Under the pieces are notes generated by a model. It did no database searches. It was not told the DNA's origin and saw only the letters and a program-made list of their open reading frames with translations. Source: Octopus sinensis (Eukaryota). From it: 64,000 nucleotides of DNA. The position numbers and the translations under genes are program-made. Position 1 is the stretch's first letter, and each line of letters begins with the position of its first letter. Below are positions 5,010 to 62,920 of this stretch, piece after piece. The stretch spans positions 121,582,001 through 121,646,000 of the forward strand of contig NC_042997.1 in the NCBI RefSeq assembly GCF_006345805.1, read 5' to 3'.

Positions 5010-5527
5010 AGAAATATGCGCAGTCATGGCTGTATGGTTGAGAAACTCGCTTTCCAACCATATGGTTTGGATTGCAGTCCCTTTACAGAGCACCTAAGGC
5101 AAGAGCCTTCTAATGTAGTCCTGAACTGTCCAATGTTTTGAGAGTGAATTCGATAGACGGAAACTGTGTGGATGCCTGTCCATATATACATATGTGTGTG
5201 TGCGTGTGTGTGTGTGTGTGTGTGTGGATAGATGTGTTTGTGTGTGCACGTGCTTCTCTCCCACGTTGCTTGGCAAGCGGTGTTGGTTTATTTACGTTCA
5301 ATATCTTATCGCTCCTGTAAAAGAGATAGACAGAATAAGTAATAGACTTTAAAAAAAATATTAGTAGTGCGTAGGATTGGCTGAGTGGTAAGTAGCTTGC
5401 TTTCCAACCACATGTTCTGGGTTCAGTCACCTTGGGCAAGTGTCTTCTTCTATAGCCTCAGGCCGATCAAAGCCTTGTGAGTGGATTTGGTAGACGTAAA
5501 CTGAAAGAAGCCCGTCGTATATATATA

Positions 5528-13058: not shown

Positions 13059-13096
13059 GGCGCTGGAGTGGCTGTGTGGTAAGTAGCTTGCTAACC
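13059..13096 (+). mobile_element. SINE A head, 5' part (A-box), cut by the LINE
   Basis: ggcgctggagtggctgtgtggtaagtagcttgctaacc; resumes at 18561. Confidence 0.9.
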
Positions 13097-13485
13097 TCAC
13101 TGACTGAAGAGTGACTTTGCTTACTGTACTACGGTTTGGACGCGTTTTCTTCCCGGTAAGAATTTTGCTGTGTTGTTAATTGTTGAATTTCTACTACTGA
13201 AAACTTGTCTTTAAACGTTGCTGAACTGTCTTGTTCTCCGGTTTTACCGGGGAATAATTGGATAATTTCTTACCGTTGAACTGTTAGCCATTGTGGCTTT
13301 TTATTTACGTGACTATACATAGTCCTGCCAGACTATTTTCGTGCCCCTCCCCCGAATGGGGGTGGGAATTGGAATTTTTGAACTGCTTTTTTGAACTACT
13401 TTGGAAGAAAAACTTTCTATAGGTTTCCCAGTTTTGTGGGAAACCAATATTCGTAATTTTTGTGTTGTTTAATTTCAACAGAATA

Positions 13486-14904
13486 ATGTCTGTTGAAATT
13501 ATTCACGAAAGTAGTGCTCTTGAGGAGAGCAATGTTAAAAAATTTTCTGCAGTAGCCGCAGTGGCCACTGAGAACATTGACATCGATGTCAATCAGCTCG
13601 TCGAGCTATTTAAAAGAATGCAAGAGGAGGGTGGTGATGTTAAAATATCACCCTCCGCCAGTATCGTGGAGACCGAGAAGCGGACCGTAGTGTTTAAAAC
13701 TTTCTGTCCACAAAGCAGAAGGTTCAAACACTTTGAAAAAAGCACCATCGAGAAATGCCTGTCCCCGATTTGGAAGGACATCGTGTACGTCGCCAGGGGA
13801 CGGGCATATGGCACTGTGGATGTCCGCTTCTCGGGGGAAGAAATGGCCCGCGGGCATTCTGTGAACCCCCTAAAAACCAAGGAGGTGGTACTTTTCCCAA
13901 GCTATAGGGGACGCAGGACGTCCCGGGTCAGGATTGTAGAAGCCCGCCGCCGGAAGTAGATCCGGTAGAGGTAGTGGCCGCCCTGTTATATAAAAGGGCG
14001 GACAAAATAAAAATACTAGAAGTAACATGCTCTACCCCTCTATTTTGGCTCGGGCGTAACATTAATATATTAATTCAAGGAACAGCGGAGGACCTGCAGC
14101 TCCTTCCTGAGAGGGTGCTCGTGGGCGAGAACGTAGCCCTCAGGGTACAGGTCGAAGGCCGAAAACCCACCTGTTACGCCTGCGGCAAAAAGGGCCACAT
14201 TCGTGTAGACTGTCCAGACAAGCAAAAGAAACCGCAGACACCAGGCCCCTCAGATAATAAAAAAGTCCCTACCCTTGCAAACACACCTACCCCTACAAAA
14301 ACAAAAAAATCCCACTCCTGCTGTTACGGTGCCAACCCCAAAACAGACTGAAGAAAAAATCCAGCCCTCGCACTCACAAATCCCTACACTATTAAAACCT
14401 CCCACCCCCCTAAAAACTGCGGCGCCTACCGAACAAACTATTACTACCCAGCCCTCGCACTCACAAACCCCTACACTATTAAAACCTCCCACCCCCCTAA
14501 AAACTGCGGCGCCTACCGAACAAACTATTGCTACCCCAGACGATACCATGGAGGTATCAGAGGGGGGATTTACACCAGTTCGTAAAAGAATTCGTGCAGC
14601 ATCCCCGTCCACATCCCCTACAAAAAATAATAAAAACAAAGACACACCACAGACACGGAAAAAAAAATCCCGCTCAACTAGCCCAGAAAAAGAAGACAAA
14701 AAAGAAAATGAACTCATATTAATTGAATTCGACACACAAGACAAATACATAAACGATATTGTGGTTCAGCATCAGTCAGCAAGACTGTACAACAAATACA
14801 AAGATCGAAATAGACACGCGTGGATTGCGGAAACAACGTTCAAACAATTAAAAGACAGACACCAAACGCCATCCGGCATATCGCGAACTTGCCGGACTAT
14901 CTGA
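13486..14904 (+). pseudogene. LINE ORF1 (gag-like), frameshifted
   Basis: Three successive frames; zinc knuckle CYACGKKGHIRVDC; Pro/Thr/Lys-rich C-terminal half. Frameshifts near 13945 and ~14300. Confidence 0.85.
14361..14535 (+). repeat. 87-bp tandem repeat (2 copies) in ORF1
   Basis: QPSHSQ(I/T)PTLLKPPTPLKTAAPTEQTI(T/A)T occurs twice, offset by 87 nt. Confidence 0.9.
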
Positions 14905-14995
14905 AGAAAGAGGAGAAAGAAGGGGCCCACAAACGTGTGGTGAGGTCGGCCCCCACCTCTCCAACGAAATGTAAGTAGAACTTTTACTTTTTGTA

Positions 14996-17900
14996 ATGGC
15001 TTCGCTTAACCTTGGTTGTTTAAATGTGCGTGGTCTGAGTTCGAAGTGGAAGCAGGCTTGTTTCCTCGACGACCTCAGATCACATGATATACATGTGATG
15101 GTTGCTACAGAGACCAAGCTGGACAGCCTACAAACCTTCTCGCCTCTCCTGAATGGCTACGAGAAAATCATGTCTCCTGGCCAGACCGGAGGGCGAGGGG
15201 GCGTAGTGGTACTGATCCGTAAAGACTTGGCTCTACAGACAAGTACAGTCTATGTAGACCCAGAAGGTGGGCTGGTCGTCCTTGATGTAACATACAGCAG
15301 TAAGGCCTTCAGGTTGATCGGACTCTATGCACCTTGTGCTAGAGGTTCCCAAACTGATTTTTATCGGCGCCTAGAGGGCTTTCTCGTGACGTCGAAGACT
15401 TTAGTGATATTAGGGGACTTTAATGCTATCGTTGACGTACACATCGATAGCGTTGGCTCGATCTATAGGAAAGTGAACTCACGTCTCGTGGATCTGCTTA
15501 AGCGGTTTCAGCTAGCAGATCGTTACAGACTTGACCATCCGAACGTCCCAGAGAGATAAGTCTAGTTTTAGTTGTCCACAGCTCGTCCAGGTGCCCTATA
15601 CTGACCATAGAATGGTCACGTGTAGACTGGACATAGATAGCACACTTAAGATAGGAACCGGCTACTGGAAGCTGAACAAGTCTATTTTGACACGCGAGGC
15701 ATACCGTAGCCGGATTAAGGTGTTAGTGCAGAGGGCGTTAACCGGAGCCGTGGTTAATGACCGGTGGTGGTTCACCCTCAAAAGAGCCATTCGATTCGAG
15801 TCCATTAGATTTAGTAAACAACTAAGACTAGATAGGGCTAGAATAGAAGGGCAACTAGTTAAGAACTTAGAAGAGGCGTTGAGGTTGGGCTCTGCATCTC
15901 ACATTTTAGCGGCGAGAACGGCATTAGACCGTCACCTCAAAACCAAACATGAGGGATGTAGAGTCCGGGCTAAAGTACGAGCATTGGGCCGTGAGGGAAT
16001 TAATGTTGCCGGATGGGCCCGTACGATAGAAACACAGCGTGGAAACGATGCCACAATTGGGTCTCTTGTTGATGAAAACGGATGCACGATCAAGAAGCGG
16101 GACGAGATGTGTGAGGCACTTCACAAGCACTTCGCCGAGTTGTTCGGGAGGTGCGGGACGCTGGATCATGGTGAGGCCCTTAGGGACTTCCTGTCTGGTG
16201 GCCCGCGCCTCTCGACACGAGAGACTGAGTGCTGTGAAGGGCCAATCACAGCCGAGGAAGTAATCGAGGTGTTGGGCAAGTGCCCCGGGGAGAAGTCGCC
16301 GGGTCTCGATGGTCTGCCCTATGAATTTTATAGAAGTATGCCAGACTTGTTCGGGCACCTGCTGGCTAGCGTCTACGCCAACTGGCAGCAGAATGGGAGA
16401 ATTCCCAAGTCTGCGAGCCGGGGGGCGGTGACGTTGATCAGGAAGGACCCGAACAATGGGGAGGAGATAGGGAACTTCAGGCCCATAACTCTGTTAAACA
16501 CAGAGTTAAAGATTCTGGCCAAGGTGCTAGCAAAAAGGTTGGCGCGGGTCGTGGACAAACTTGTCGGGGAAGCGCAAACGTGCGCTATCCCCGGCAGAAC
16601 GATCCACGACAATCTCCACCTTATACGCTACTCCTTAGAGAGGGTGGGGAAGCTTTCTGGCGCAGGGGGAGCACTGGTACATTTAGACCAGTCTAAAGCA
16701 TTTTATAGGGTCGACCATCGGTACCTGGCGGCGGTCCTCGGAGAGGCTGGCCTAGGCCCGACCTATCGAGGTTGGATCGCTGCTTTGTATAGCGACATCG
16801 AGTCTGTAGTCAAGGTGAACGGTTCCTTTTCGAAGCCGTTCAGGATCGAGCGTTCAGTTCGTCAAGGGTGTCCCCTGTCCTCGCTCCTATACGTATTGGC
16901 TCTTGAGCCTTTGCTGCGGAAGTTGGAGGCACTAGGGGGCGCGCCGCATGATCTATGGTGTGGAAGAGGAGCTACGGCGTATGCTGATGACACCTCCATC
17001 ATCGTGGCAGACGAAGGCCAGCTTCCAGTGGTGGAAGAGGCCATCAAAAGCTACGAGGCGGTGGCAGGAGCAAAGGTTAACAAGGACAAGTCGGTCGGTT
17101 TGCAACTCGGCACCTGGAGGGGCAAGCCGATGCCGTCCAATAACGTCGTAGGGCGTTGGACGGAAGGTCCTGTTAAGCTGCTCGGAGTCTGGTTCGGGCC
17201 AGACCTCCAGATTGAGAAAAATTGGAGTGAGGTGGCCAACAAGGTGACCGCTCTAACTCAGACCTGGTCTGGGCGGGTGTTATCCCTGCTAGGGAAGGCG
17301 GAGTTGGTGCAGATGTTTATAGCATCAGTAATCACCTACCGTCTGACCGTGGTGCCTTGCCCCGATTTGTGGCTGAACAAGTTGGAGAGAATCCTTTTCC
17401 GATTTTTGTGGAAAGGAGGAAAGCCACTTGTAAAGCGCTCTGTCTGCTGCCAGAAACCGCTAAAGGGTGAGCTAGGGATGCCTTGGCTGAGGATGCGAAA
17501 ACTCGCGTTAAGGTTGAGGCACCTCTGGCTTTACCTGGATGGAGAGCAGGTGTGGTCGCCGCACGTCCGGTTCTACCTTCCCCAGTTAACATCCCTAACG
17601 GACATCGGTGCATGGATCAAGCGGAGACCTAAACTGAGTGAATGGCATTTGGAGTGCCGTCAGGCGCTCCAGCTACTATCTCGGGTGGGCAACGCCGGCA
17701 ACAGGAGTTCCACCACGGATTTCTATAGCGGGTTAGTGGAGATTAAGTCCGAAGACGCCTTGGGGGAGACCCTGGGCTACGATGAAAATCAGTTGGTCAA
17801 CCTGTTCTGGAGGACGTTCGGGCTGGGGTATCTGGATAATTACCAGAAATCCCTGGCCTGGCAGTGTTTCCGTGCGGCTTTACCTGTTCGCGACAAGCTG

Positions 17901-18332
17901 TCAAGGCACGGTAGTACCGTCTCGCCGACATGTCCGCGATGTGAGCAGGATAGGGAGACCGTCTTGCACGCATTCGTGGAGTGTCCGGAGTTATCGGGAC
18001 TGATAGCTTTTGTTGAACAACTGTTGTCAGTGATGGGAAGAGTACAGCTATCAGCTGAGTCTATCATCGAGATTGTGCCGCCCCCTTTCCTTAACAGGGA
18101 AAGAAAGGCTTGTTTTTTCTGTGTAGTAGCCATACTGAAAGAAACAGTATGGAAGACGCGTACGAAAGATATAGTGACAGGCACCTTTGTCTCCGGCCAG
18201 GGGTTGATTAACTTTTTTAGTTACCACCTCAGTAGCAAAATCAGGCTGGAGAAGAGGTGTCTGTCACGAGATATGTTTGTGAAAAGATGGAAGCCTGTGG
18301 CATACAAGATGGGTATGTTTGGCACCAGGTAA
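14996..18332 (+). pseudogene. LINE ORF2 (APE endonuclease - RT - CCHC), disrupted near 15550
   Basis: LNVRGL, LGDFN, TDHRMV; SPGLDG, FRPITLLN, QSKAF(Y)RVDH, RQGCPLS, YADD, LLGVWF; CPRC..ETVLHAFVEC. The frame changes between the 187 aa and 933 aa ORFs. Confidence 0.92.
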
Positions 18333-18560
18333 GTGTGACCGGATCAGAAAGTAAAGGTTCTACCCGGATGGCCGGATGTCCGTCCTTCGACATGATCATT
18401 AATATTTTTAAACATTGCCTTCATAAAATTCATTGTTTATAATCTTATCCGTAATTTCATTCGAAAATTGTAACTGTGTTAAGCTACTTCACCCTTTATA
18501 TTTGTCTGTCCTTGTTTGTCCCCTCTTTGTAAATGCCTAAATGGCAAATTATATGAAATA

Positions 18561-18722
18561 AAGTAGCTTGCTAACCAACCACATGGTTCCGGGTTCAGTC
18601 CCACTGCGTGGCATCTTGGGCAAGTGTCTTCTACTATAGCCCCGGGCCGACCAATGCCTTGTGAGTGGATTTGGTAGACGGAAACTGAAAGAAGCGTGTC
18701 GTATATATGTATATATGTATGT

Positions 18723-25249: not shown

Positions 25250-26200
25250 TGTTGGCATTCCGTCGGTTACGGTGATGAGTCGTTCCAGTTGATCTGATCA
25301 AAGGAACAGCCTGCACGTGAATTTATCATGGAAATGACTGGGCAATCCCACAGACACGCATGTACTTAACGTAATTCTCAGGGAGATGCAACGTAACACC
25401 GAGTGTGACTAGGCTGTCCCTTTGAAATATAGGTACTACTCATTCTTATTTCTTTATTGCCCACAAGGGGCTAAACATTAAGGGGACAAACAAGAACAGA
25501 CAAAAGGGATTAAGTCGATTACATCGACCCCAGTGCGTAACTAGTACTTAATTTATCGACCCCGAAAGGATGAAAGACAAAGTCGACCTCGGGGAATTTG
25601 AACTCAGAACGTAACGGCAGACGAAATACCTATTTCTTTACTACCCACAAGGGGCTAAACACAGAGGGGACAAACAAGGACAGACAAAGGGGTTAAGTCG
25701 ATTACATCGACTCCAGTGCGTAACTGCTACTTAATTTATCGACCCCGAGAGGATGAAGACAAAGTCGACCTCGGGGAATTTGAACTCAGAACGTAACGGC
25801 AGACGAAATACCTATTTCTTTACTACCCACAAGGGGCTAAACACAGAGGGGACAAACAAGGACAGACAAAGGGGTTAAGTCGATTACATCGACTCCAGTG
25901 CGTAACTGCTACTTAATTTATCGACCCCGAGAGGATGAAAGACAAAGTCGACCTCGGCGGAATTTGAACTCAAAACGTAACGGCAGACGAAATACCGCTA
26001 TGCATTTCGCCCGTCGTGCTAACGCTTTTGCCAGCTCACCGCCTTAAATCATTCTGCTCATTCTTGCCAGCTGAGTGGACTCGAGCATCATGAGATAAAG
26101 TGTCTTGCTCAAGGACAAAGCGCGCCGCCGGGAATCGAACGTACGACCATACAATTATGAGCCGAATACCTTAACCACTTAGCCACGCGCTTTCACACCT
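25250..26200 (-). mobile_element. SINE family C (tRNA head at ~26110-26195 + CORE-like box), interrupted by a SINE B trimer
   Basis: Minus strand gtggctaagtggttaagg...gttcgattcccgg...gtccttgagcaagacact; TSD ctcattctt at 25439-25447 and 26057-26065. Confidence 0.75.
25448..26046 (-). mobile_element. Nin/Deu-domain SINE (B2) trimer: one head + three ~182-bp units
   Basis: Nin-like tttcatcctttcggggtcgataaattaagtac; tail tttgtctgtccttgtttgtcccctct...aaagaaata; junctions at 25630/31 and 25812/13. Confidence 0.9.
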
Positions 26201-29231: not shown

Positions 29232-29640
29232 TCTTTTACTTGTTTCAGTCATTTGACTGCGGCCATGCTGGAGCACCGCCTTTAGTCGAAGAAATCGACC
29301 CCAGGACTTATTCTTTGTAAGCCTAGTACTTATTCTATCGGTCTTTTTTGCCGAACCGCTAAGTTATGGGGACGGGAACACACCAGCATCGATTGTCAAG
29401 CGATGTTGTGGGACAAACACAGACACACAAACATATACACACACATACATACATATATATATACATATACATATATACGACGGGCTTCTTTCAGTTTCCG
29501 TCTACCAAATCCACTCACAAGGCTTTGGTCGGCCCGAGGCTATAGTAGAAGACACTTGCTCAAGGTGCCACGCAGTGGGACTGAACCTGGAACCATGTGA
29601 CTCGTAAACAAGCTACTTACCACACAGCCACTCCTGCGCC
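29231..29640 (-). mobile_element. SINE A, full length
   Basis: Near-consensus head, core and tail. Confidence 0.9.
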
Positions 29641-30639
29641 TATATATATATTTATTTATTTATATTTATTTATTTATATATATATATATTTATTTATTTA
29701 TATTTATATATATAATATATATATATATATTATTTATTTATATATATAGGTAGATAGATAGACATACATACATACATACATACATACATACATACATACA
29801 TACATACATACATACATACATACATACATGCATACATACGTACAAACCAAAAGCATGGCAGATTATGTAGAATTGTCCCCAACTTGAATACGACTCAAAT
29901 ATAAACCACAAATAATGTTGAGAAATATTGGAATTCACAGTCTTTAACAACTGGTTTATTTCTGATATGTGTGACTATTGTTATTTTAGCTGTTGGCACA
30001 TGTTACCGCCACTCCAGTCCAACGGAAGAAAATTTTTATCGATTTCCTTTGATAAACCTGGCAGACTCTCTCTTATATAAGCAACTTACTTTCTCTGCTA
30101 CTATCGTCTAACACACAATACTCAGTTGGGTATTTTGTATGTGAAATGAAGGCGTCGGCTACGATTAATTTCAATGACAGCCCAGACGCTTTCACTGCAA
30201 GCGAAGTCTTATTTGTTGGCATAGCTAACATTAAGTGGACTGGAGTAATAATTAATACACATAACGTTGCCTTATGAAATGTCAAGTCGCGTTCTCCGTA
30301 AATATATAAGAAGTGAGTTGAAACTTTCTCCAAATATTCTCAGTACTTAAACAAAACCAAAGAAAAGCGAATAAAAATTAAATTCAATTGAGAATAAAAT
30401 ATACGTTTTTATTGGTCGACGTCCAAACAAAATCTCTAAACGAAACGGGCTCTCTATCATACACACACACATACACACACAGGTACACACACACAAACAC
30501 ACACAGGTATAGAATCATTCAGATACACAGCCACAAACAATTGTATACAGACGTATGAACCATTATAGATTACTTGTGTTGCTAAATATATCCTTAGTTT
30601 ACATCGTTATTATTTTTAGCACAGCTAAATCGTGTGGAG

Positions 30640-30868: not shown

Positions 30869-31050
30869 ATGCTGAGTCACCTTCGGTGAACCACGGTTTT
30901 CTCGGTTCTTTCCCTTTCCCTTTTTAAGGCGTTTCCTTGGTAGATTTATCAGAACATTGGAATATCAAAATATATATAAGAATATTGTGTGCACCATCTC
31001 TTCGGAGGCGTGGGTTGGTATCCCACAGCTGCCACAATATAATTTTTATA

Positions 31051-31221
31051 GGCGTAGGAGTGGCTGTGTGGTAAGTAGCTTGCTTACGAACCACATGGTT
31101 CCAGGTTCAGTCCCACTGCGTGGCACCTTGGGCAAGTGTCTTCTGTTATAGCTTCGGGTCGACCAAAGCCTTGTGAGTGGATTTGGTAGACGGAAACTGA
31201 AAGAAGCCCGTCGTATATATG

Positions 31222-31265
<44 letters not shown>

Positions 31266-38810: not shown

Positions 38811-38984
38811 GAAAACAACATCCATTTATGAATTTATTTATTTATTAATTTTTTTAAATATATATTTTACCTGTGAATTTGCGTATGTAATCTGGGAATG
38901 CATACAATGTGCTTCTCTGCCCTAGGTGTACGGAAAACACTCGGTGAGAAATGGAAGAAAATTTGAAGAAAGAGAAAAAAATGA

Positions 38985-39881
38985 TAATGACCACACAGAA
39001 CAATTAGGGACAGTGCAATACAAGGGTCAAGTGGGGTGTTGAACAATGCCGTGAATGCAATAAGTAACAAAAAAACAATCAACGAAATAACGAAAAGTAA
39101 AATTCCCCCAAAAGGAGTTCTTCACAGTGACTACCCAGGAACCACACACACCCTGGTTACCCCGACCGCCAGGGGTGCTTCGGCGGGTGTCCTCTCTTTT
39201 CAACTCCTCCGGTTTATAAGCAAATGTTCATAATAGATCCATTCACAGAGGCCATCGTCGCTACATTCATGCACCTTTCATCAAAAATACTGGGTGGGGT
39301 CGGAGGATAGGAACTTCCCTCTCCACACTCGCTTTATTTTCAAGTGGAACTTGAAAAAGTTGATGCGACCTTGACCGAAGAAGAAAATATCTGTCTTCAG
39401 TCCTTTCAATCTCGTGCACCACGCTATCTCCTTCTTCATAGTCACCAGGTTTCTGAATGCTTGACACACCGGAAAAGACGCATTCAGCTTTCAGTACCCG
39501 GGGCCCTGTCTACGGACCGTATCTAGGCCAACCGTGTAGTTCACAAATTTATCGTCTGTGCAGCCGACGACATTGAACTGTCGACAACCTATGCTATTTT
39601 TAACTTCTGGCTAAAACAGAGAATCTTATTTAAATACGCTCTGAAAGACCTAGTTCTGTTTGCCCATGTCCACATTGGCACATTCGGCAAATCCAGTAGG
39701 TACCTGTCAGCCAAAGAGAAACGACTGTGCAAGTTTGTGAGGGTTTTGCACCCCTATCGGCTAGCCCATCCCTATCCAGGCAAGCATCCGAACTTGTGTT
39801 CAAGTCACCCACTAAAACTAAAGTGTGAGATGTCCCGAGGAAAACCTCCAATCGTTTGAAGAAGTCAGGAAGCACTGCCCC
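38985..39881 (-). mobile_element. Second Tx1-like LINE remnant: APE C-half joined to the 3' end
   Basis: FFKRLEVFLGTSHTLVLVGDLN..DRY..MWTW..GPGY*KLN, followed after an internal deletion by a 3' UTR-like segment. Confidence 0.7.
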
Positions 39882-39932
<51 letters not shown>

Positions 39933-39954
39933 GATAATAATAATAATAATAATG

Positions 39955-39997
<43 letters not shown>

Positions 39998-40046
39998 TAA
40001 TAATAATAATGATAATAATAATAATAATAATGATAATAATAATAAT

Positions 40047-40352
40047 ATAGAAATAGAACATTTAAAAGAAAAAATACACCAGGAAAATGTAGATAGAAGC
40101 CACACAACAATATCATAGTAGGTGCATTAGGCATGATAAAAAAATATTCAGACAAATACATTACAAAAACACCAGGACTTACAAACACATATAACATACA
40201 GAAAATTGCACTACTAGGCACTGCACACATCCTACGCAGAACACTTTCCATACAATAACCATCAGAGCATCACAACAAATCACAGCACATACCCAAGGCA
40301 CACAGAGCTGCGCTCGGTAGTGAAGTGAAAGCACGCTATAAAAATAAAACTA

Positions 40353-40356
<4 letters not shown>
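40047..40356 (+). mobile_element. R4/Dong-like 3' end in (AAT)n
   Basis: IIVGALGMIKK..IQKIALLGTAHILRRTL*; (AAT)n on both sides. Confidence 0.85.
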
Positions 40357-40410
<54 letters not shown>

Positions 40411-40559
40411 TGCCCTGATGCAGTACCAGGTAGTGGCTCTCGTTTGAAGAAGTCAGGAAGCACTGCCCCAATAATAATAATAATAATAATAATGATGATA
40501 ATAATAATAATAATAATAATAATATAATAATAATAATATTAATAATAATAATAATAATA

Positions 40560-41822: not shown

Positions 41823-43770
41823 CAGGGGTTCACCAAACATTTTGCACGTCGGGCTGTATAACTGTGAGAATGATGTGCGAGGGCCGCATAGCCATTTTGT
41901 TCAATACTGTACAATGAATACACAAAAAATAAAGACAAACCAACATATCTATTTAAAGAAAAGTTATCAAGGATGGTGACGTCAGCAATGAAATATTTAT
42001 ATCACGCCCAGTGCACACATATCCGAATCTCACAAACTAAGTAGCAAAAAGAGTTTGATGAGATTTGTGGAACTGGTGTTTAGCTTTTAGAATATTGAAG
42101 GCGGCGAGCTGGCAGAATCGTTAGCGCGGAGAGCGAAATGCTTGATGATATTTCGTCTGTCTTTAATTTCTGAGTTCAAATTCCACCGAGGTCGACTTTG
42201 CCTTTCATCCTTTCGGGGTCGATTAAATAAGTACCAGTTACGCACTGGGGTCGATATAATCGACTTAATCTGTTTGTATGTCCTTGTTTGTCCTCTCTGT
42301 GTGTAGCCCCTTGTGGGTAGTAAAGAAATAGGTATTTCATCTGTCTTTACGTTCTGAGTTCAAATTCCGCCGAGGTCGACTTTACCTTTCATCCTTTCGG
42401 GGTTGATTAAATAAGTACCAGTTACGCACTGGGGTCGATGTAATCGACTTAATCCGATTGTCTGTCCTTGTTTGTCCTCCCTGTGTTTAGCCCCTTGTGG
42501 GTAGTAAAGAAATAGGTATTTCGTCTGCCGCTACGTTCTGAGTTCAAATTCTGCAGAGGTCGACTTTGCCTTTCATCCTTTCGGGGTCGATTAAATAAGT
42601 ACCAGTTACGCACTGGGGTCGATATAATCGACTTAATCCGTTTGTCTGTCCTTGTTTGTCCCCTTAATGTTTAGCCCCTTGTGGTCAATAAAGAAAAAAG
42701 AATATCCTCAATATTTGTTTTGGAGTTGCTGCATTCAATCAAGAGAATCCCTTTCAAATGTTCATCAGTCAACTTCTTTCCATGTGCTGACTTCACATAC
42801 TTCATCTTGAAAGTGTTTTTCTCACTGTCATAAGTTGTTCCAAACACTGATGCCATACCAGAGGCAAATTTCTTCAACTTTGAAAACTCATCATCAGGTA
42901 AGCAGCGATAAAATTCTACAAGATTCCTTCTCTGTGTAATATCATTCAAGAAGTCATTTTGCTGGCAAATCAATGAGCACCAACTGTAGTTCAACTGGCA
43001 CGGCATCAAGGTTACACTCAAACGGATTCTGGAACAGAATAAATTCTATCGAGATCTTAAAATCTCTCAAAAAAACTCGAGGTTTACATCTTCTGCGAGT
43101 TCAGCACGAATCTCTTTGAAACACTGAAAATGAGAGATTTCCTTCTTCCATTTGTGCTTCAAACACTGATAGCTTTCTTCGAAATCCTTTGATGATTCTG
43201 TAGAGATCACAAATAAGGTTATCCTTTTCCTGAAGTTTCAAGTTCAATTCATTCATTTGGGACGTGATGTCAACCAAAAAACGACAATTTTGACAGCCAA
43301 GTAGAATGTGACAGAAATGAATCAACTCTATCCTTTTCAGTGAAAAATATATCTATTCATCTATGGAGCTTATTAAAACGCAACAGGACTTTACCCCTGC
43401 TGAGAAACTTTATTGCTGTGTGATAATGCAAGTCACAAAGTTCAGAATCAATTTTTTCAAGAAAAGCCCAGAACCATCGGTGATTAAATGCATAGATCCC
43501 CAATGAAGTTTACTGCCGAAGCGACTGGTTTCACTACACAAGAAATATCTAATTCTTTCCCATAAAGTACTTGTTGATGTATAATGCAGTGTATAAACAG
43601 GGCGCCCTGGAGTTGAATATCTTCCAGCGTAGTCCTAGTCTGACCCACCAGACCCTGCCTTACCCCAACCATGTTTTTTCCTCCATCAACTGTAACAGAA
43701 CGAATCTGATTCCACTGTAGCCTTGTAAAGTTTTCTGCACTTCAATGAAAATGTCTTCCCCAGCTGGAAG
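41823..43770 (-). mobile_element. hAT (Buster/SPIN/Charlie-like) transposon remnant
   Basis: TIR-like caggggttcaccaaac at 41823; MVG..GLVG, HCIIHQQVL, FLVDITSQMNELNLKLQ, FGTTY..KMKYVKS..LTDEHL, ending ..ILKAKHQFHKSH. Confidence 0.8.
42099..42700 (+). mobile_element. Nin/Deu-domain SINE B2 trimer
   Basis: Head + three units; junctions gaaata|ggtatt at 42330/31 and 42514/15; 7-bp TSD agaatat at 42089-42095 and 42699-42705. Confidence 0.9.
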
Positions 43771-49439: not shown

Positions 49440-49795
49440 ATATTGGCTTTAAATTTTGGCACAAGCTATGGGAAGAGCATAAGTCGATTAATCGATCCCG
49501 AATAGTAAAGTAGATCTGGGCAAAATTTGAACTCAGAACATAAAGACGGACGGAATACCTATTTCTTTACTACCCACAAGGGGCTAAACATAGAGAGGAC
49601 AAACAAGGACAGACAAACGGATTAAGTCGATTACATCGACCCCAGTGCGTAACTGGTACTTAATTTATCGACCCCGAAAGGATGAAAGGCAAAGTCGACC
49701 TCGGCGGAATTTGAACTCAAAACGTAACGGCAGACGAAATACCGTTAAGCGTTTTGCTCAATGAGCTAATGATTCTGTCTGCTCGCCGTCTTAAA
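49440..49795 (-). mobile_element. Nin SINE composite: old head + young B2 unit + B1-type remainder
   Basis: Junction gaaata|ggtattcc at 49559/60; the remainder ends cttgtgccaaaatttaaagccaata. Confidence 0.85.
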
Positions 49796-49880
49796 AGAAT
49801 AGTAGAAATATTGGTTTCAAATTATGGCATAGAGTACGAACTGTCGGTTCTGTTTTCTCGTGAGTATTGCCGTACCAATG

Positions 49881-50599: not shown

Positions 50600-50780
50600 A
50601 AGGTATTGGTTTCAAATTTTGGAACAAGGCCTGTCGATTACATCGACCCCAGTTTTCAACTGTTACTCCGAAACAATGAAATGCAAAGTCAACCTCGGCG
50701 GAATTTGAAATCAGAACGTAAAGGCGGACGAAACGCCGCTAGGCATTTTACCCGGCATGCTAACGATTCTGCCAGCTCTT
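50600..50780 (-). mobile_element. Nin SINE, B1 type
   Basis: Head gagctggcagaatcgttagc; tail ccaaaatttgaaaccaata. Confidence 0.75.
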
Positions 50781-58090: not shown

Positions 58091-58183
58091 TGCTTATGGG
58101 TCTGAATAAAATATGATCGACCTAGAAAGGATGTCAGTGAAAATATTTACCATTCAAGAACGGTAGATGTGCAGATTCGTTAA

Positions 58184-58510
58184 GGCGCAGGAGTGGCTGT
58201 GTGGTAAGTAGCTTGCTTACCAACCACATGGTTCCGGGTTCAGTCCCACTGTGTGGCACCATAGGCAAGGGTCTTCTACTATAGCCTCGGGCCGACCAGA
58301 GCCTTGTGAGTGGTTTTAGTAGACGGAAACTGAAAGAAGCCCGTCGTATATTTGTATATATATAAATGTGTGTGTTTTTGTGTCTGTGTTTGTCCCCACA
58401 ACATCGCTTGACAACCGATGCTAGTGTGTTTACATCCCCGTAACTTAGCGGTTCGGCAAAAGAAACCGATAGAATAAGTACTAGGCTTACAAAAAATAAG
58501 TCCTGGGGTC
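58184..58510 (+). mobile_element. SINE A, 3'-truncated
   Basis: Near-consensus head and core. Confidence 0.85.
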
Positions 58511-60526: not shown

Positions 60527-60761
60527 TTATTTCTTTATTACCCACAAGGGGCTAAACACAGAGAGGACAAACAAGGACAGACAAACGGATTACGTCGATT
60601 ATATTGACCCCAGTGCGTAACTGGTACTTATTTAATCGACCCCGAAAGGATGAAAAGCAAAGTCGACCTCAGCTGAATTTGAATTCAGAACGTAGCGGCA
60701 GAGGAAATTCTGTTAAGCATTTCGCCCGGCCCGCTAACGTTTCTGCCAACTCGCCGCCTTT
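60527..60761 (-). mobile_element. Monomeric full-length Nin SINE B2
   Basis: 12-bp TSD tctacactattt at 60515-60526 and 60762-60773. Confidence 0.88.
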
Positions 60762-61087: not shown

Positions 61088-61505
61088 ACTCTTTTACTCT
61101 TTTACTCTTCTACTTGTTTCAGTCATTTGACTGAGTCCATTCTGGAGCACCGCCTTTAGCCGAGCAAATCGACCCCAGGACTTATTCTTTGTAAGCCTAG
61201 TACTTATTCTATCAGTCTCTTTTGCCGAACCGCTAACTTACGGGGACGTAAACACACCAGCATCGGTTGTGAAGCGATGTTCGGGGCACCAACACACAAA
61301 CACAAACACATACACACATACATATATACATATGCATATATACGACGGGCTTCTTTCAGTTTCCGTCTATCAAATCCACTCACGAAGCTTTGGTCGGCCC
61401 GAGGCTATAGTAGAAGACACTTGGCCAAGACGCCACGCAGTGGGACTGAACCCGGAACCATTTGGTTCGTAAGCAAGCTACTTACCACACAGCTACTCCA
61501 ACGTC
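61088..61505 (-). mobile_element. SINE A, full length
   Basis: Near consensus. Confidence 0.88.
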
Positions 61506-62035
61506 TATGAGTGGCTGTATTTAACATCCAAGTATTTAACATATACTTGAATTTTGTATTTGTTTTGCATGATTCTTGATGTGAATTCGTGTGTTGAAAG
61601 AGATTTGTTGTGTCTTGAGCGGCTCATTACCCTGCCAAATGATTGTTTAATCAACACATTAAACAAATGATCGATTAAATAGTTGGTTAGATATTTAACT
61701 GATTAACTAACATGAAACCAGTGTGCGTGTGTTATTTTTATTGGTGTAGTGTTCCTTCCAAGACACAATAAGATGTATCGTCTTCATTTCCACTAAATTT
61801 GAATGAGCTTCGATAGATTTTTATCGGAGTAAAATTCAAGTGTCGCAATCACATAGTACATGTAAAATAACCGGCCAGCGTAAAATCCTCAACGCGATCC
61901 CTCGAAATGTTATGAACAGCGACATCACCCTTATTTTCCTGATGACATAATAAACAAGAAAAGAAAAATGGAAACAAAAGAAAATAAAATTAACCAGATA
62001 TATTGAATTATATGGTCCAAAATACTCTAACTCTA

Positions 62036-62450
62036 GGCGCAGGAGTGGGTGTGTGGTAAGTAGCTTGCTTACCAACCACATGGTTCCGGGTTCGTTCACA
62101 CTGCGTGATACCTTGGGCAAGTATCTTCTACTATAGCCTCGGGTCGACTAAAGCCTTACAAGTAGATTTCGTAGACGGAAACTAAAAGAAGCCCGACGTA
62201 TATATGTATATATATATATGTATGTGTCTGTATATGTTTGTGTGTCTGTGTTTGTCCCCCAACATCACTTCACAACCAATGTTGGTGTGTTTACGTCCCC
62301 GTAACGTAGCGGTTCGGCGAAAGAGCCCGATAGAATAAGTACTAGGCTTACAAAGAATAAGTCCTGGTGTTGATTTGCTCGACTAAAGGCTGTACTCCAG
62401 CATGGCCGCTGTCAAATGATTGAAACAAGTAAAAGAATAAAGAATAAAGA
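62036..62450 (+). mobile_element. SINE A, full length
   Basis: Near consensus. Confidence 0.88.
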
Positions 62451-62739: not shown

Positions 62740-62920
62740 AAAATGCTTAGCAGTACTTCGCCCGTCTTTACGTACTGAGTTCAAATTCCGCTAGTGTTGA
62801 CTTTACCTTTTATCATTTTAGGGTCGATAAAATTCGTACCAGTTGGTTACAGGAGTCAACGTAACCCTTACTCCTTTTCCCCGAAATTGCTGGTCTGGTA
62901 CCAAAATTTGAAACCAATAT
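62740..62920 (+). mobile_element. Nin SINE B1, diverged
   Basis: gagttcaaattcc...gtcgataaaa...ccaaaatttgaaaccaata. Confidence 0.7.

What the first reader, a model, noticed from the sequence alone, without database searches (positions are those of the whole stretch)
18501..18560. LINE 3' UTR shares its tail with the Nin-domain SINE B2: a Tx1-driven SINE
Seen: tttgtctgtccttgtttgtcccctct (18501-18526) is 26/26 identical to the B2 tail (reverse complement of 25663-25688). It is followed in both by a 4-bp stem with a 5-nt loop of different sequence (TGCC-taaat-GGCA versus GCCC-cttgt-GGG(C/T)). Both end in gaaata without poly(A), 34 and 32 nt after the shared block. Established: shared 3' tails with a stem-loop mark stringent SINE-LINE pairs (mostly L2, CR1 and RTE), whereas L1-type elements usually rely on poly(A). 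Inference: B2 is a Nin SINE that acquired a Tx1 3' end, and B1 copies with another tail are its relatives.
Basis: partly seen in the sequence, partly recalled or inferred. Interest (0 to 1): 0.8.

Follow-up and report, generated by a model that had tools for sequence, protein, structure and literature searches.

The report
Octopod SINEs carry an L1-type LINE tail
A nearly full-length L1/Tx1-type jumping gene in this octopus-like genome ends in the same roughly 60-base tail, with a tiny conserved hairpin and no poly(A), as several short parasitic repeats (SINEs), which points to the enzyme family that most likely copies those SINEs.

Summary
The 26-mer at 18501-18526 is identical to the SINE tail at 25663-25688(-). 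It occurs 9 times in the window with up to 3 mismatches, against 0 expected. Both elements then have a 4-bp hairpin and end in gaaata without poly(A).

The LINE spans 13097-18560. A perfect 16-bp target-site duplication and an empty-site comparison fix its ends. It has a CCHC ORF1 and an APE-RT-zinc ORF2. The closest solved structure is human L1 ORF2p.

The tail is not private to this copy. LINE relatives with 52-64% protein identity, from Argonauta hians and from metagenome contigs, end in a homologous tail. Relatives at about 40% identity keep the hairpin and the A-rich end. The stem covaries. Several Argonauta SINE families carry the Argonauta version of the tail.

The SINE tail is a mosaic. 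Its block matches this LINE 26/26. Its last 32 nt match sister LINE families better (27-28/32 against 19-20/32). The real driver is therefore probably a sister family.

The "Tx1" label rests on literature only, and "Nin" could not be tested. This is a new member of the known shared-tail SINE/LINE kind, in a clade where I found no such pair reported.

The parts
13081..13096 (+). 5' copy of the LINE target-site duplication (aagtagcttgctaacc), inside the head of a host CORE-like SINE
   Evidence: identical 16-mer at 18561-18576; intact host-SINE copies are continuous across the site
13097..18560 (+). Near full-length L1-superfamily (Tx1-like) LINE, 5464 bp, with no poly(A)
13468..14904 (+). ORF1 remnants in three frames (13468-13959, 13974-14351 with a CCHC zinc knuckle, 14275-14904). 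Includes an 87-bp tandem duplication at 14361-14536
   Evidence: (PF00098, 3.9e-06)
14996..18332 (+). ORF2: APE endonuclease (14996-15559), one frameshift near 15531-15559, then RT and a C-terminal zf-RVT domain (15531-18332)
   Evidence: PF03372 1.4e-09, PF00078 8.1e-27, PF13966 4.5e-09; human L1 ORF2p 5.6e-49, R2 1.6e-20
18333..18560 (+). LINE 3' UTR
18501..18526 (+). 26-nt T/G/C-rich block, identical to the B2 SINE tail
18534..18546 (+). Hairpin TGCC-taaat-GGCA
18555..18560 (+). Terminal gaaata, the 3' end of the LINE
18561..18576 (+). 3' copy of the target-site duplication
25447..26043 (-). B2 SINE copy A: head plus three 182-184-bp body/tail units. Tails end at 25813, 25631 and 25447. Probable TSD agaatgag[c/t]ag at 26064-26054 and 25446-25436
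42100..42698 (+). B2 SINE copy B: head plus three 184-bp units. Short TSD agaatat at 42089-42095 and 42699-42705
49560..49790 (-). B2 SINE copy C (monomer), directly followed by a degenerate B1-type unit with a B1 tail (49559-49441)
60528..60758 (-). B2 SINE copy D (monomer), with a 12-bp TSD aaatagtgtaga at 60773-60762 and 60526-60515
38983..39881 (-). Second LINE copy of the same lineage (L003-like family). It is 5'-truncated, internally deleted and abuts (ATT)n at its 5' side. Its tail is degenerate (...ctgtgtGGTCattatc) and lacks the 5' stem and loop

Best explanation
The last 58-60 nt of an octopod L1-superfamily (Tx1-like) LINE lineage form a conserved 3' module. It has three pieces: a T/G/C-rich block, a 4-bp G+C hairpin with a 5-nt loop (mostly cttgt), and an A-rich end ...AATAAAGAAAT(A/C) with no poly(A).

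Several tRNA-type SINE families carry a copy of this module. They include B2 in the window and at least three families in Argonauta.

The proposed mechanism is inferred by analogy with stringent LINEs such as UnaL2. The LINE ORF2 protein binds the hairpin and its flanks on the RNA. It nicks A/T-rich target DNA, since TSDs here start with AAG/AAA. It then starts reverse transcription at a fixed point 12-14 nt 3' of the hairpin. LINE and SINE copies therefore all end exactly at gaaat(a/c), although Pol III transcripts of SINEs must run on into the flank.

B2 is therefore most likely mobilised in trans by this LINE lineage. The most likely driver is a family whose whole tail matches B2. That would be an L003/L018a-like or still unsampled family, rather than the family of the copy at 13097-18560. 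That copy shares the block perfectly but has a diverged stem and loop.

Shown: shared sequence, exact ends, TSDs, homology of the tail among LINE families, and stem covariation. Inferred: RT recognition, trans-mobilisation, and the identity of the driver.
For: Block identity is 26/26 and 9 copies occur against 0 expected.

The LINE ends are fixed by a 16-bp TSD and an empty-site alignment.

Sister LINE tails match the SINE. L003...ccttaatgtttccgGGCCcttgtGGCCaataaaagaaatc. L018a...cgtcccctctatgtttttGCCcttgtGGCtaataaaagaaata. L001b...ctgtgtcGGCCcttgtGGCTaataaagaaatc. They match the distal 32 nt of the SINE 25-28/32.

LINE relatives at about 40% identity keep a Y-rich run, a 4-bp hairpin with a cttgt/catgt/ctcgt loop, and a ...aataaa(ta) end.

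Covariation over 27 tails: 88.9% of cells are paired against 73.8% in shuffles (0/500). There are 11 double-change cells against 2.4. Slid controls reach at most 46%. Pair 2 is GC19/CG4/AU1 and pair 3 is CG19/GC4/UG2.

RNAalifold on 16 octopod tails predicts exactly this hairpin.

Argonauta SINEs of several families carry the Argonauta stem version, GGCC/GGCT, as Argonauta LINEs do. Window SINEs carry GCCC/GGGY.

The SINE similarity to LINE 3' UTRs starts only at the block, while LINE 3' UTRs are alignable further upstream.

A second LINE copy of the L003-like family lies in the window itself.
Against: No second copy of the same LINE family could be retrieved, so presence of the exact 26-mer in that family's consensus is not shown.

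The exact block is seen in SINEs of two genera, but among LINEs only in this one copy. Other LINE tails match it 16-20/26. Secondary SINE-to-LINE transfer of the block is therefore not excluded.

The stem is only 4 bp, and the sequences are related. The 11 double-change cells reduce to about 4-5 independent events.

In most single-sequence folds tail energies are not better than shuffles (z from -2.8 to +0.8).

TSD evidence comes from 4 insertions only.

No functional data exist.
Confidence: 0.72

Rival explanations
1. One reading: the LINE family represented by the copy at 13097-18560 is itself the driver of B2. Recognition would rest on the shared 26-nt block plus any 4-bp hairpin, whatever its sequence.
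For: The block is 26/26 identical, better than any other LINE tail (16-20/26). The hairpin position and the gaaata end are kept. The copy is young (perfect 16-bp TSD, few frameshifts) and lies among B2 copies.
Against: The distal 32 nt match only 19-20/32, against 27-28/32 for L003/L018a-type tails. The loop is taaat instead of the otherwise near-invariant cttgt. In tested stringent LINEs, loop and stem-flank nucleotides matter. I know this from UnaL2 studies such as PMC1636434, which I did not re-read here.
Confidence: 0.2
2. The block in this LINE is a secondary acquisition from a SINE, by template switching or recombination between SINE and LINE RNAs or cDNAs. The identity would then say little about recognition.
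For: The canonical block (tttgtctgtccttgtttgtcc / tttatctgcccttgtttgacc) is found in SINE families of both genera. Among LINEs it is found only in this copy. This RT lineage seems prone to template jumping, given the SINE trimers, the SINE-head/RT-fragment chimera and the tandem LINE arrays.
Against: The block region of this LINE aligns with the native 3' UTRs of sister LINEs, through caccct...tgtccttg...gtcc(cc)tct.tgt. The LINE's distal tail is not SINE-like, so a simple 5'-truncated SINE insertion is excluded. Even if this rival is true, it implies SINE and LINE RNAs meeting on the same RT.
Confidence: 0.15
3. The conserved tail serves another RNA function, such as 3'-end formation via AAUAAA, stability or export. 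SINEs would then be copied by some other, poly(A)-independent route.
For: Most tails contain AATAAA just before the end. The hairpin is very small.
Against: There is no poly(A) on any copy, and element ends lie only 5-7 nt after the AATAAA motif. Pol III SINE transcripts have no use for a Pol II poly(A) signal, yet they keep the module and end at exactly the same nucleotide as the LINEs.
Confidence: 0.08
4. Chance or low-complexity resemblance.
For: The block is T/G/C-rich.
Against: There were 0 matches in 100 shuffles against 9 observed. Homologous tails occur in other species.
Confidence: 0.01

Closest known systems
Stringent SINE/LINE pairs with a common 3' tail (eel UnaL2/UnaSINE1, zebrafish ZfL2; Okada/Ohshima model; PMC3747384, PMC4176376, PMC1636434)
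   Same: The SINE 3' end is homologous to the LINE 3' UTR end. A conserved stem-loop shows compensatory changes. The ends are exact and there is no dependence on poly(A). Several SINE families share one LINE tail.
   Different: Those LINEs belong to the L2/CR1/RTE clades and often end in short tandem repeats such as (TGTAA)n. Here ORF2 is L1-type, the stem is only 4 bp, and this family ends in unique sequence. Sister families are followed by (ATT)n. Function is untested here.
L1-clade stringent pairs in plants and algae (maize/sorghum LINE1-1_ZM with ZmSINE2/3; Chlamydomonas L1-1_CR with SINEX-3_CR; PMC3472496, PMC3747384)
   Same: An L1-superfamily LINE has a conserved 3' hairpin shared with tRNA SINEs, and compensatory mutations are seen.
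   Different: Those are plants and green algae. ZmSINE2 ends in (T)n and SINEX-3_CR in (A)n. No animal L1/Tx1 example appears in the 58-pair table of PMC3747384.
SINEU mobilised by Tx1-Mar in crocodilians (PMC4494074)
   Same: A Tx1-clade LINE is proposed as the driver of SINEs. Heads are added by template switching.
   Different: That link was inferred from shared target preference (Mariner-N4_AMi). The passage I read is cut off, but it appears to say no LINE with a matching tail was found. Here the link is a shared tail, and no common specific target is seen for B2.
Human L1/Alu (relaxed, poly(A)-dependent; PMC10830416)
   Same: ORF2 architecture is the same (APE-RT-Cys), and human L1 ORF2p is the best PDB match (5.6e-49).
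   Different: The elements here have no poly(A) tail. The SINE shares unique sequence with the LINE. ORF1 has a CCHC knuckle rather than the L1 Transposase_22-type ORF1.

Membership tests
Shared-tail (stringent-type) SINE/LINE partnership | The SINE 3' end is homologous to the 3' end of a LINE 3' UTR | tested here: met
   26/26 block and 45/58 overall with the window LINE. Distal 27-28/32 with L003/L018a LINE tails.
Shared-tail (stringent-type) SINE/LINE partnership | The tail is a constant feature of the LINE family, not of a single copy | tested here: inconclusive
   A homologous tail is present in 5 sister LINE copies or families (L001a/b, L003, L018a/b), in a degenerate second copy in the window, and in relatives at about 40% identity. 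No second copy of the very same family could be fetched.
Shared-tail (stringent-type) SINE/LINE partnership | A conserved stem-loop supported by compensatory changes | tested here: met
   88.9% paired, 0/500 shuffles reach this, 11 double-change cells, slid controls at most 46%. RNAalifold predicts the same 4 pairs.
Shared-tail (stringent-type) SINE/LINE partnership | Same insertion signature (TSD length and target) for SINE and LINE | tested here: inconclusive
   The LINE TSD is 16 bp. SINE TSDs are 12, about 11 and 7 bp. All four start with AAG/AAA/AGA. n=4.
Shared-tail (stringent-type) SINE/LINE partnership | The tail is required for trans-mobilisation by the LINE protein | not testable with these tools
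   This needs a retrotransposition assay.
Tx1 clade (L1 superfamily) of non-LTR retrotransposons | ORF2 has an N-terminal APE endonuclease, RT and a C-terminal Cys-rich domain, and is closest to L1-type RTs | tested here: met
   (PF03372, PF00078, PF13966). (L1 ORF2p 5.6e-49 against R2 1.6e-20).
Tx1 clade (L1 superfamily) of non-LTR retrotransposons | RT-domain phylogeny places the element with Tx1 rather than L1 proper | not testable with these tools
   No named Tx1 reference sequence was reachable, and the protein searches returned no clade names. Only indirect support exists. Octopus vulgaris L1-like LINEs are annotated L1-Tx1: 13 recently active families, 421 insertions, 2.29 Mb, which is about 5.4 kb each (PMC13282606). 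Tx1 is the L1-type clade listed for molluscs (PMC10294476).
Tx1 clade (L1 superfamily) of non-LTR retrotransposons | ORF1 with CCHC zinc knuckle(s). That this is typical of Tx1 is my recollection. | tested here: met
   PF00098 in 13974-14351, with no L1 Transposase_22 domain.
Tx1 clade (L1 superfamily) of non-LTR retrotransposons | Target-sequence preference (common in Tx1 but not universal; PMC4494074) | tested here: inconclusive
   The window LINE sits in a SINE head (n=1). L003-type copies abut (ATT)n in 4 of 4 cases: L003, L018a, L018b, and window copy 2 at its 5' side. About-40% relatives lie in head-to-tail arrays. B2 SINEs show no common target.
Nin-DC / Deu SINE superfamily | Central domain homologous to the Nin-DC consensus | not testable with these tools
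   No Nin-DC sequence was accessible in text or supplements. From memory, the resemblance of ...ctttcatcctttcggggtcgataaattaagtaccagt... to Deu/Nin cores is only a lead.
Nin-DC / Deu SINE superfamily | tRNA-derived head with A and B boxes | tested here: inconclusive
   ARAGORN finds no tRNA and Rfam has no hit. A B-box-like gagttcaaattcc is visible in the sequence.
Relaxed, poly(A)-dependent L1-type mobilisation | The element and its SINEs end in poly(A) | tested here: not met
   The LINE and all B2 copies end in gaaata directly followed by a TSD or the next unit.

The most novel reading that the evidence does not exclude
A whole molluscan Tx1-like LINE lineage uses a minimal 4-bp hairpin plus a fixed A-rich terminus for stringent, poly(A)-independent initiation. 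Its members range from about 40% to 100% ORF2 identity. It is the hitherto unnamed driver of major octopod SINE families. B2 would use the octopod tail. B1 would use a tail resembling that of the about-40% relatives. The lineage's template-jumping RT also makes the head-to-tail SINE multimers and LINE arrays that can seed satellites.
Probability: 0.35. Interest if true: 0.7.

Novelty: new member of a known kind. Interest (0 to 1): 0.55.

Why it matters
SINEs make up roughly 8-12% of octopus genomes, and their expansion is often discussed in relation to cephalopod genome and brain evolution. The papers I could read name no LINE partner for them. A 2026 annotation leaves 893 of 900 recently active SINE families unclassified (PMC13282606).

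A shared, structured tail points to L1-Tx1-type LINEs as the engine for at least some of these families. It would also be an animal example of stringent 3'-end recognition inside the L1 superfamily. In the survey I read (PMC3747384, 2013), shared tails in that superfamily were recorded only for maize/sorghum and Chlamydomonas.

This makes a question directly testable: how L1-type reverse transcriptases moved between hairpin-specific and poly(A)-based template choice.

Tried and rejected
1. Looking for more copies of the same LINE family failed. The full ORF2 search gave at best 61-64% identity. The C-terminal search added only short or truncated contigs. L012 and L002 end before the tail, L013-L016 have an unrelated 3' UTR, and L017 is 3'-degenerate.

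2. The metagenome scan with the protein alignment found no relative. The scan with the LINE-specific 22-mer GTAAATGCCTAAATGGCAAATT gave 3 contigs (L019-L021). They carry one unrelated sequence with no flank similarity, so these are chance matches.

3. Clade naming failed. Cluster look-ups returned no source names, and the RTclass1 paper is not held. Tx1 against L1 therefore could not be tested by phylogeny.

4. The Nin-DC check failed. No consensus is available in the held texts or supplements.

5. Rfam gave 0 hits and ARAGORN 0 tRNAs in the window.

6. I considered a longer structure in which the 26-nt block pairs with the A-rich 3' end. It is the MFE for the terminal SINE unit (-10.7 kcal/mol, z -2.76). 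RNAalifold does not recover it across 16 tails, so I do not claim it.

7. I asked whether the (AAT)n tracts at 39882-40559 mark tails of the same type. One abuts the 5' end of LINE copy 2. The others follow a different tail, CCTGgtactgcatCAGGgcat.

8. I asked whether the two SINE trimers were each copied as one unit. The unit identity matrix is ambiguous: within-locus units are more alike (92-98%) than the equivalent units of the two loci (87-90%).

Full report
OBSERVATION

The 26-mer tttgtctgtccttgtttgtcccctct is at 18501-18526(+). It recurs without mismatch at 25663-25688(-) and 25845-25870(-), and with 1-3 mismatches at six more places. That is 9 matches against 0.00 expected from shuffles. 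BLAST extends the LINE/SINE match to 30 nt with one mismatch. After the block the LINE has TGCC-taaat-GGCA (18534-18546) and ends in gaaata at 18560. The SINE has GCCC-cttgt-GGG(T/C) and ends in gaaata 32 nt after the block. Neither has poly(A). All details of the finding are correct.

WHAT THE LINE IS

The element spans 13097-18560. A perfect 16-bp target-site duplication, aagtagcttgctaacc, lies at 13081-13096 and 18561-18576. Three intact copies of the interrupted host SINE are continuous across the site. The 3' end at ...gaaata is therefore the true end of the retrotransposed unit.

ORF1 (13468-14904) is split over three frames. It contains a CCHC zinc knuckle and an 87-bp tandem duplication. 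ORF2 (14996-18332) has APE, RT and zf-RVT domains and one frameshift near 15540. Its best solved relative is human L1 ORF2p (5.6e-49). R2 proteins score about 1e-20. It is an L1-superfamily LINE.

I could not test Tx1 against L1 phylogenetically, because no named references were reachable. The Tx1 label is nevertheless consistent with published annotation. Octopus vulgaris has 13 recently active L1-Tx1 families whose 421 insertions cover 2.29 Mb, about 5.4 kb each (PMC13282606). Tx1 is the L1-type clade listed for molluscs (PMC10294476).

IS THE TAIL PRIVATE TO THIS COPY?

No same-family copy could be found. The best protein hits are 61-64% identical. Both metagenome scans failed.

Sister LINEs do carry the tail:
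- Argonauta hians L001 has two LINE 3' ends...ctgtgtcAGCCaggtGGCTaagaaagaaat and ...ctgtgtcGGCCcttgtGGCTaataaagaaatc.
- L003, a JGI contig with ORF2 64% identical, ends ...ccttaatgtttccgGGCCcttgtGGCCaataaaagaaatc.
- Argonauta L018 has ...cgtcccctctatgtttttGCCcttgtGGCtaataaaagaaata and a truncated copy with GACC/GGTC.
- A second LINE copy of the L003-like family lies in the window itself at 39881-38983(-). It is 5'-truncated and internally deleted, and its tail is degenerate.
- Relatives at about 40% identity (L005-L010) keep a pyrimidine run, then AGGC-cttgt-GCCT, TGGC-catgt-GCCA or AGGC-ct(t/c)gt-GCC, then an A/T spacer ending ...aataaa(ta).

The LINE 3' UTRs align with each other upstream of the block. 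The SINE resembles them only from the block onward. This argues that the module is LINE-native and was copied to SINEs.

STRUCTURE

On 27 distinct tails (10 LINE, 17 SINE) the 4-bp stem is paired in 88.9% of cells. Shuffles give 73.8% (0/500 reach the observed value) and slid controls at most 46%. There are 11 cells with changes on both sides, against 2.4 expected. Pair 2 is GC/CG/AU and pair 3 is CG/GC/UG. One LINE with a 4-nt loop was counted as broken, which makes the test conservative.

RNAalifold on 16 octopod tails predicts exactly these four pairs and nothing else. Because the sequences are related, the double changes amount to about 4-5 independent events. Single-sequence folds are mostly unremarkable.

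CO-VARIATION BETWEEN SINES AND LINES ACROSS SPECIES

In 35 kb of Argonauta DNA I count about 20 SINE-type tails on several SINE families. One of these families is homologous to the B2 body. The tails read ...ctgtgttcGGCCcttgtGGCTaatagagaaatc, which is the Argonauta LINE stem version. The window's SINEs have GCCC/GGGY. The canonical block also occurs in Argonauta SINEs (tttatctgcccttgtttgacc).

MOSAIC TAIL

The SINE block matches the window LINE 26/26, against 16-20/26 for the other LINE tails. The distal 32 nt match the window LINE only 19-20/32, against 27-28/32 for L003/L018a. The loop of the window LINE (taaat) departs from the otherwise near-invariant cttgt.

I conclude that the partnership is between B2 and this LINE lineage. 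The direct driver is more likely an L003/L018a-like or unsampled family. Recombination between tails is an alternative.

MECHANISM

The mechanism is inferred by analogy with stringent LINEs. ORF2p recognises the hairpin and flanks and initiates 12-14 nt downstream. This gives exact ends on Pol II LINE RNA and on Pol III SINE RNA alike. TSDs are 16 bp for the LINE and 12, about 11 and 7 bp for the SINEs. All begin with AAG/AAA/AGA, which resembles the element's own 3' end. That suggests microhomology priming, but n=4.

B1 AND OTHER CLAIMS

B1 copies share the B2 body (72-83% identity) but end in (a)ggccttgt(g/t)ccaaaatttgaaaccaata(t). That tail resembles the tails of the about-40% LINE group, for example L009 aggccttgtgccaaatttg...caataaata. 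This is a lead that B1 uses another branch of the same LINE superfamily.

The Nin-DC assignment could not be tested.

COMPARISON WITH THE LITERATURE

Ohshima's table of 58 SINE/LINE pairs has no Tx1 pair. Its only L1-clade pairs are in maize/sorghum and Chlamydomonas (PMC3747384).

Kojima linked SINEU to Tx1-Mar by shared target preference. The truncated passage I read suggests that no LINE with a matching tail was found (PMC4494074).

Octopus repeat papers that I read name no SINE partner.

I therefore rate this a new member of the known shared-tail kind, in a clade and phylum where none was documented in what I could search. Repbase entries could not be checked.

VERDICT

Noticed in passing
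window 25447-26043(-) and 42100-42698(+): Two B2 loci are trimers: a head of about 50 nt plus three 182-184-bp body/tail units joined ...aaagaaata|ggtatttcg (TRF period 182/184, 3.0 copies). In both, only the last unit has the variant tail cccctTAAtgttt...gg(g/t)CAAtaaag. Within-locus units are nevertheless more alike than equivalent units between loci, so the origin is open: a retrotransposed trimer or repeated template jumping.
   Followed up: partly
window 49441-49790(-): A B2 monomer is joined at the same internal point (ggtattcc...) to a degenerate B1-type unit ending in the B1 tail. Another B1 tail lies just upstream (49809-49827).
   Followed up: partly
window 13060-13096 + 18577-18700; also 2564-2975, 29449-29644, 31044-31242, 58183-58364, 61318-61508, 62034-62223: The LINE is inserted in the head of a different, abundant SINE that is CORE-like (cttgggcaagtgtcttc). 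Its tail is ...ggaaactgaaagaagc followed by a TA-rich/(TA)n run. At least 12 copies lie in the window, one of them a 191-bp tandem dimer (2564-2975). Its LINE partner was not examined.
   Followed up: no
window 41232-41169(-), continuing to about 40556: A B2-type SINE head (57 nt) is fused directly to a LINE RT-like fragment (DKFVGDARTCAIPN). About 600 nt later there is a tail ...ccactaCCTGgtactgcatCAGGgcat(att)n. The same tail recurs at 40430-40407 after a short APE-region piece. This looks like a head/LINE chimera of the kind expected from template switching, and like another hairpin-plus-(ATT)n tail.
   Followed up: partly
window 38983-39881(-); L003 2020-2105; L018 4851-4900 and 11192-11205: LINE copies of the L003-like family abut (ATT)n in all four cases seen, including the 5' side of the truncated copy in the window. 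Either they insert into (ATT)n microsatellites, as microsatellite-specific Tx1 families do, or they carry an (ATT)n terminal repeat.
   Followed up: partly
L005/L006 (one contig, offset 6820 bp), L007/L008, L009/L010 (offset 6596 bp): Full-length LINE relatives (about 40% ORF2 identity, clusters of 385-732 members) lie in head-to-tail tandem arrays. Each 3' end ...aataaa(ta) is followed almost directly by the next 5' UTR. The source organisms of these ENA assemblies are unknown.
   Followed up: no
L018 5021-5357: An Argonauta tRNA-type SINE family with the shared tail forms a tandem array (tails at 5042, 5200 and 5357; period 157).
   Followed up: no
window 50604-50622(-), 62901-62919(+), 49441-49459(-), 49809-49827(-): The B1 tail (a)ggccttgt(g/t)ccaaaatttgaaaccaata resembles the hairpin and spacer of the L009/L010 LINE tails. 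B1 may therefore use a second branch of the same LINE superfamily.
   Followed up: partly
window 14361-14536: An 87-bp tandem duplication (2 copies, 97% identical) lies inside the proline/threonine-rich part of LINE ORF1.
   Followed up: no
window 25449-25510(-): In the terminal SINE unit the 26-nt block can pair with the A-rich 3' end (uucuu..uuguccc with gggcaa..aagaa; -10.7 kcal/mol, z -2.76). The consensus fold of 16 tails does not recover this pairing.
   Followed up: yes
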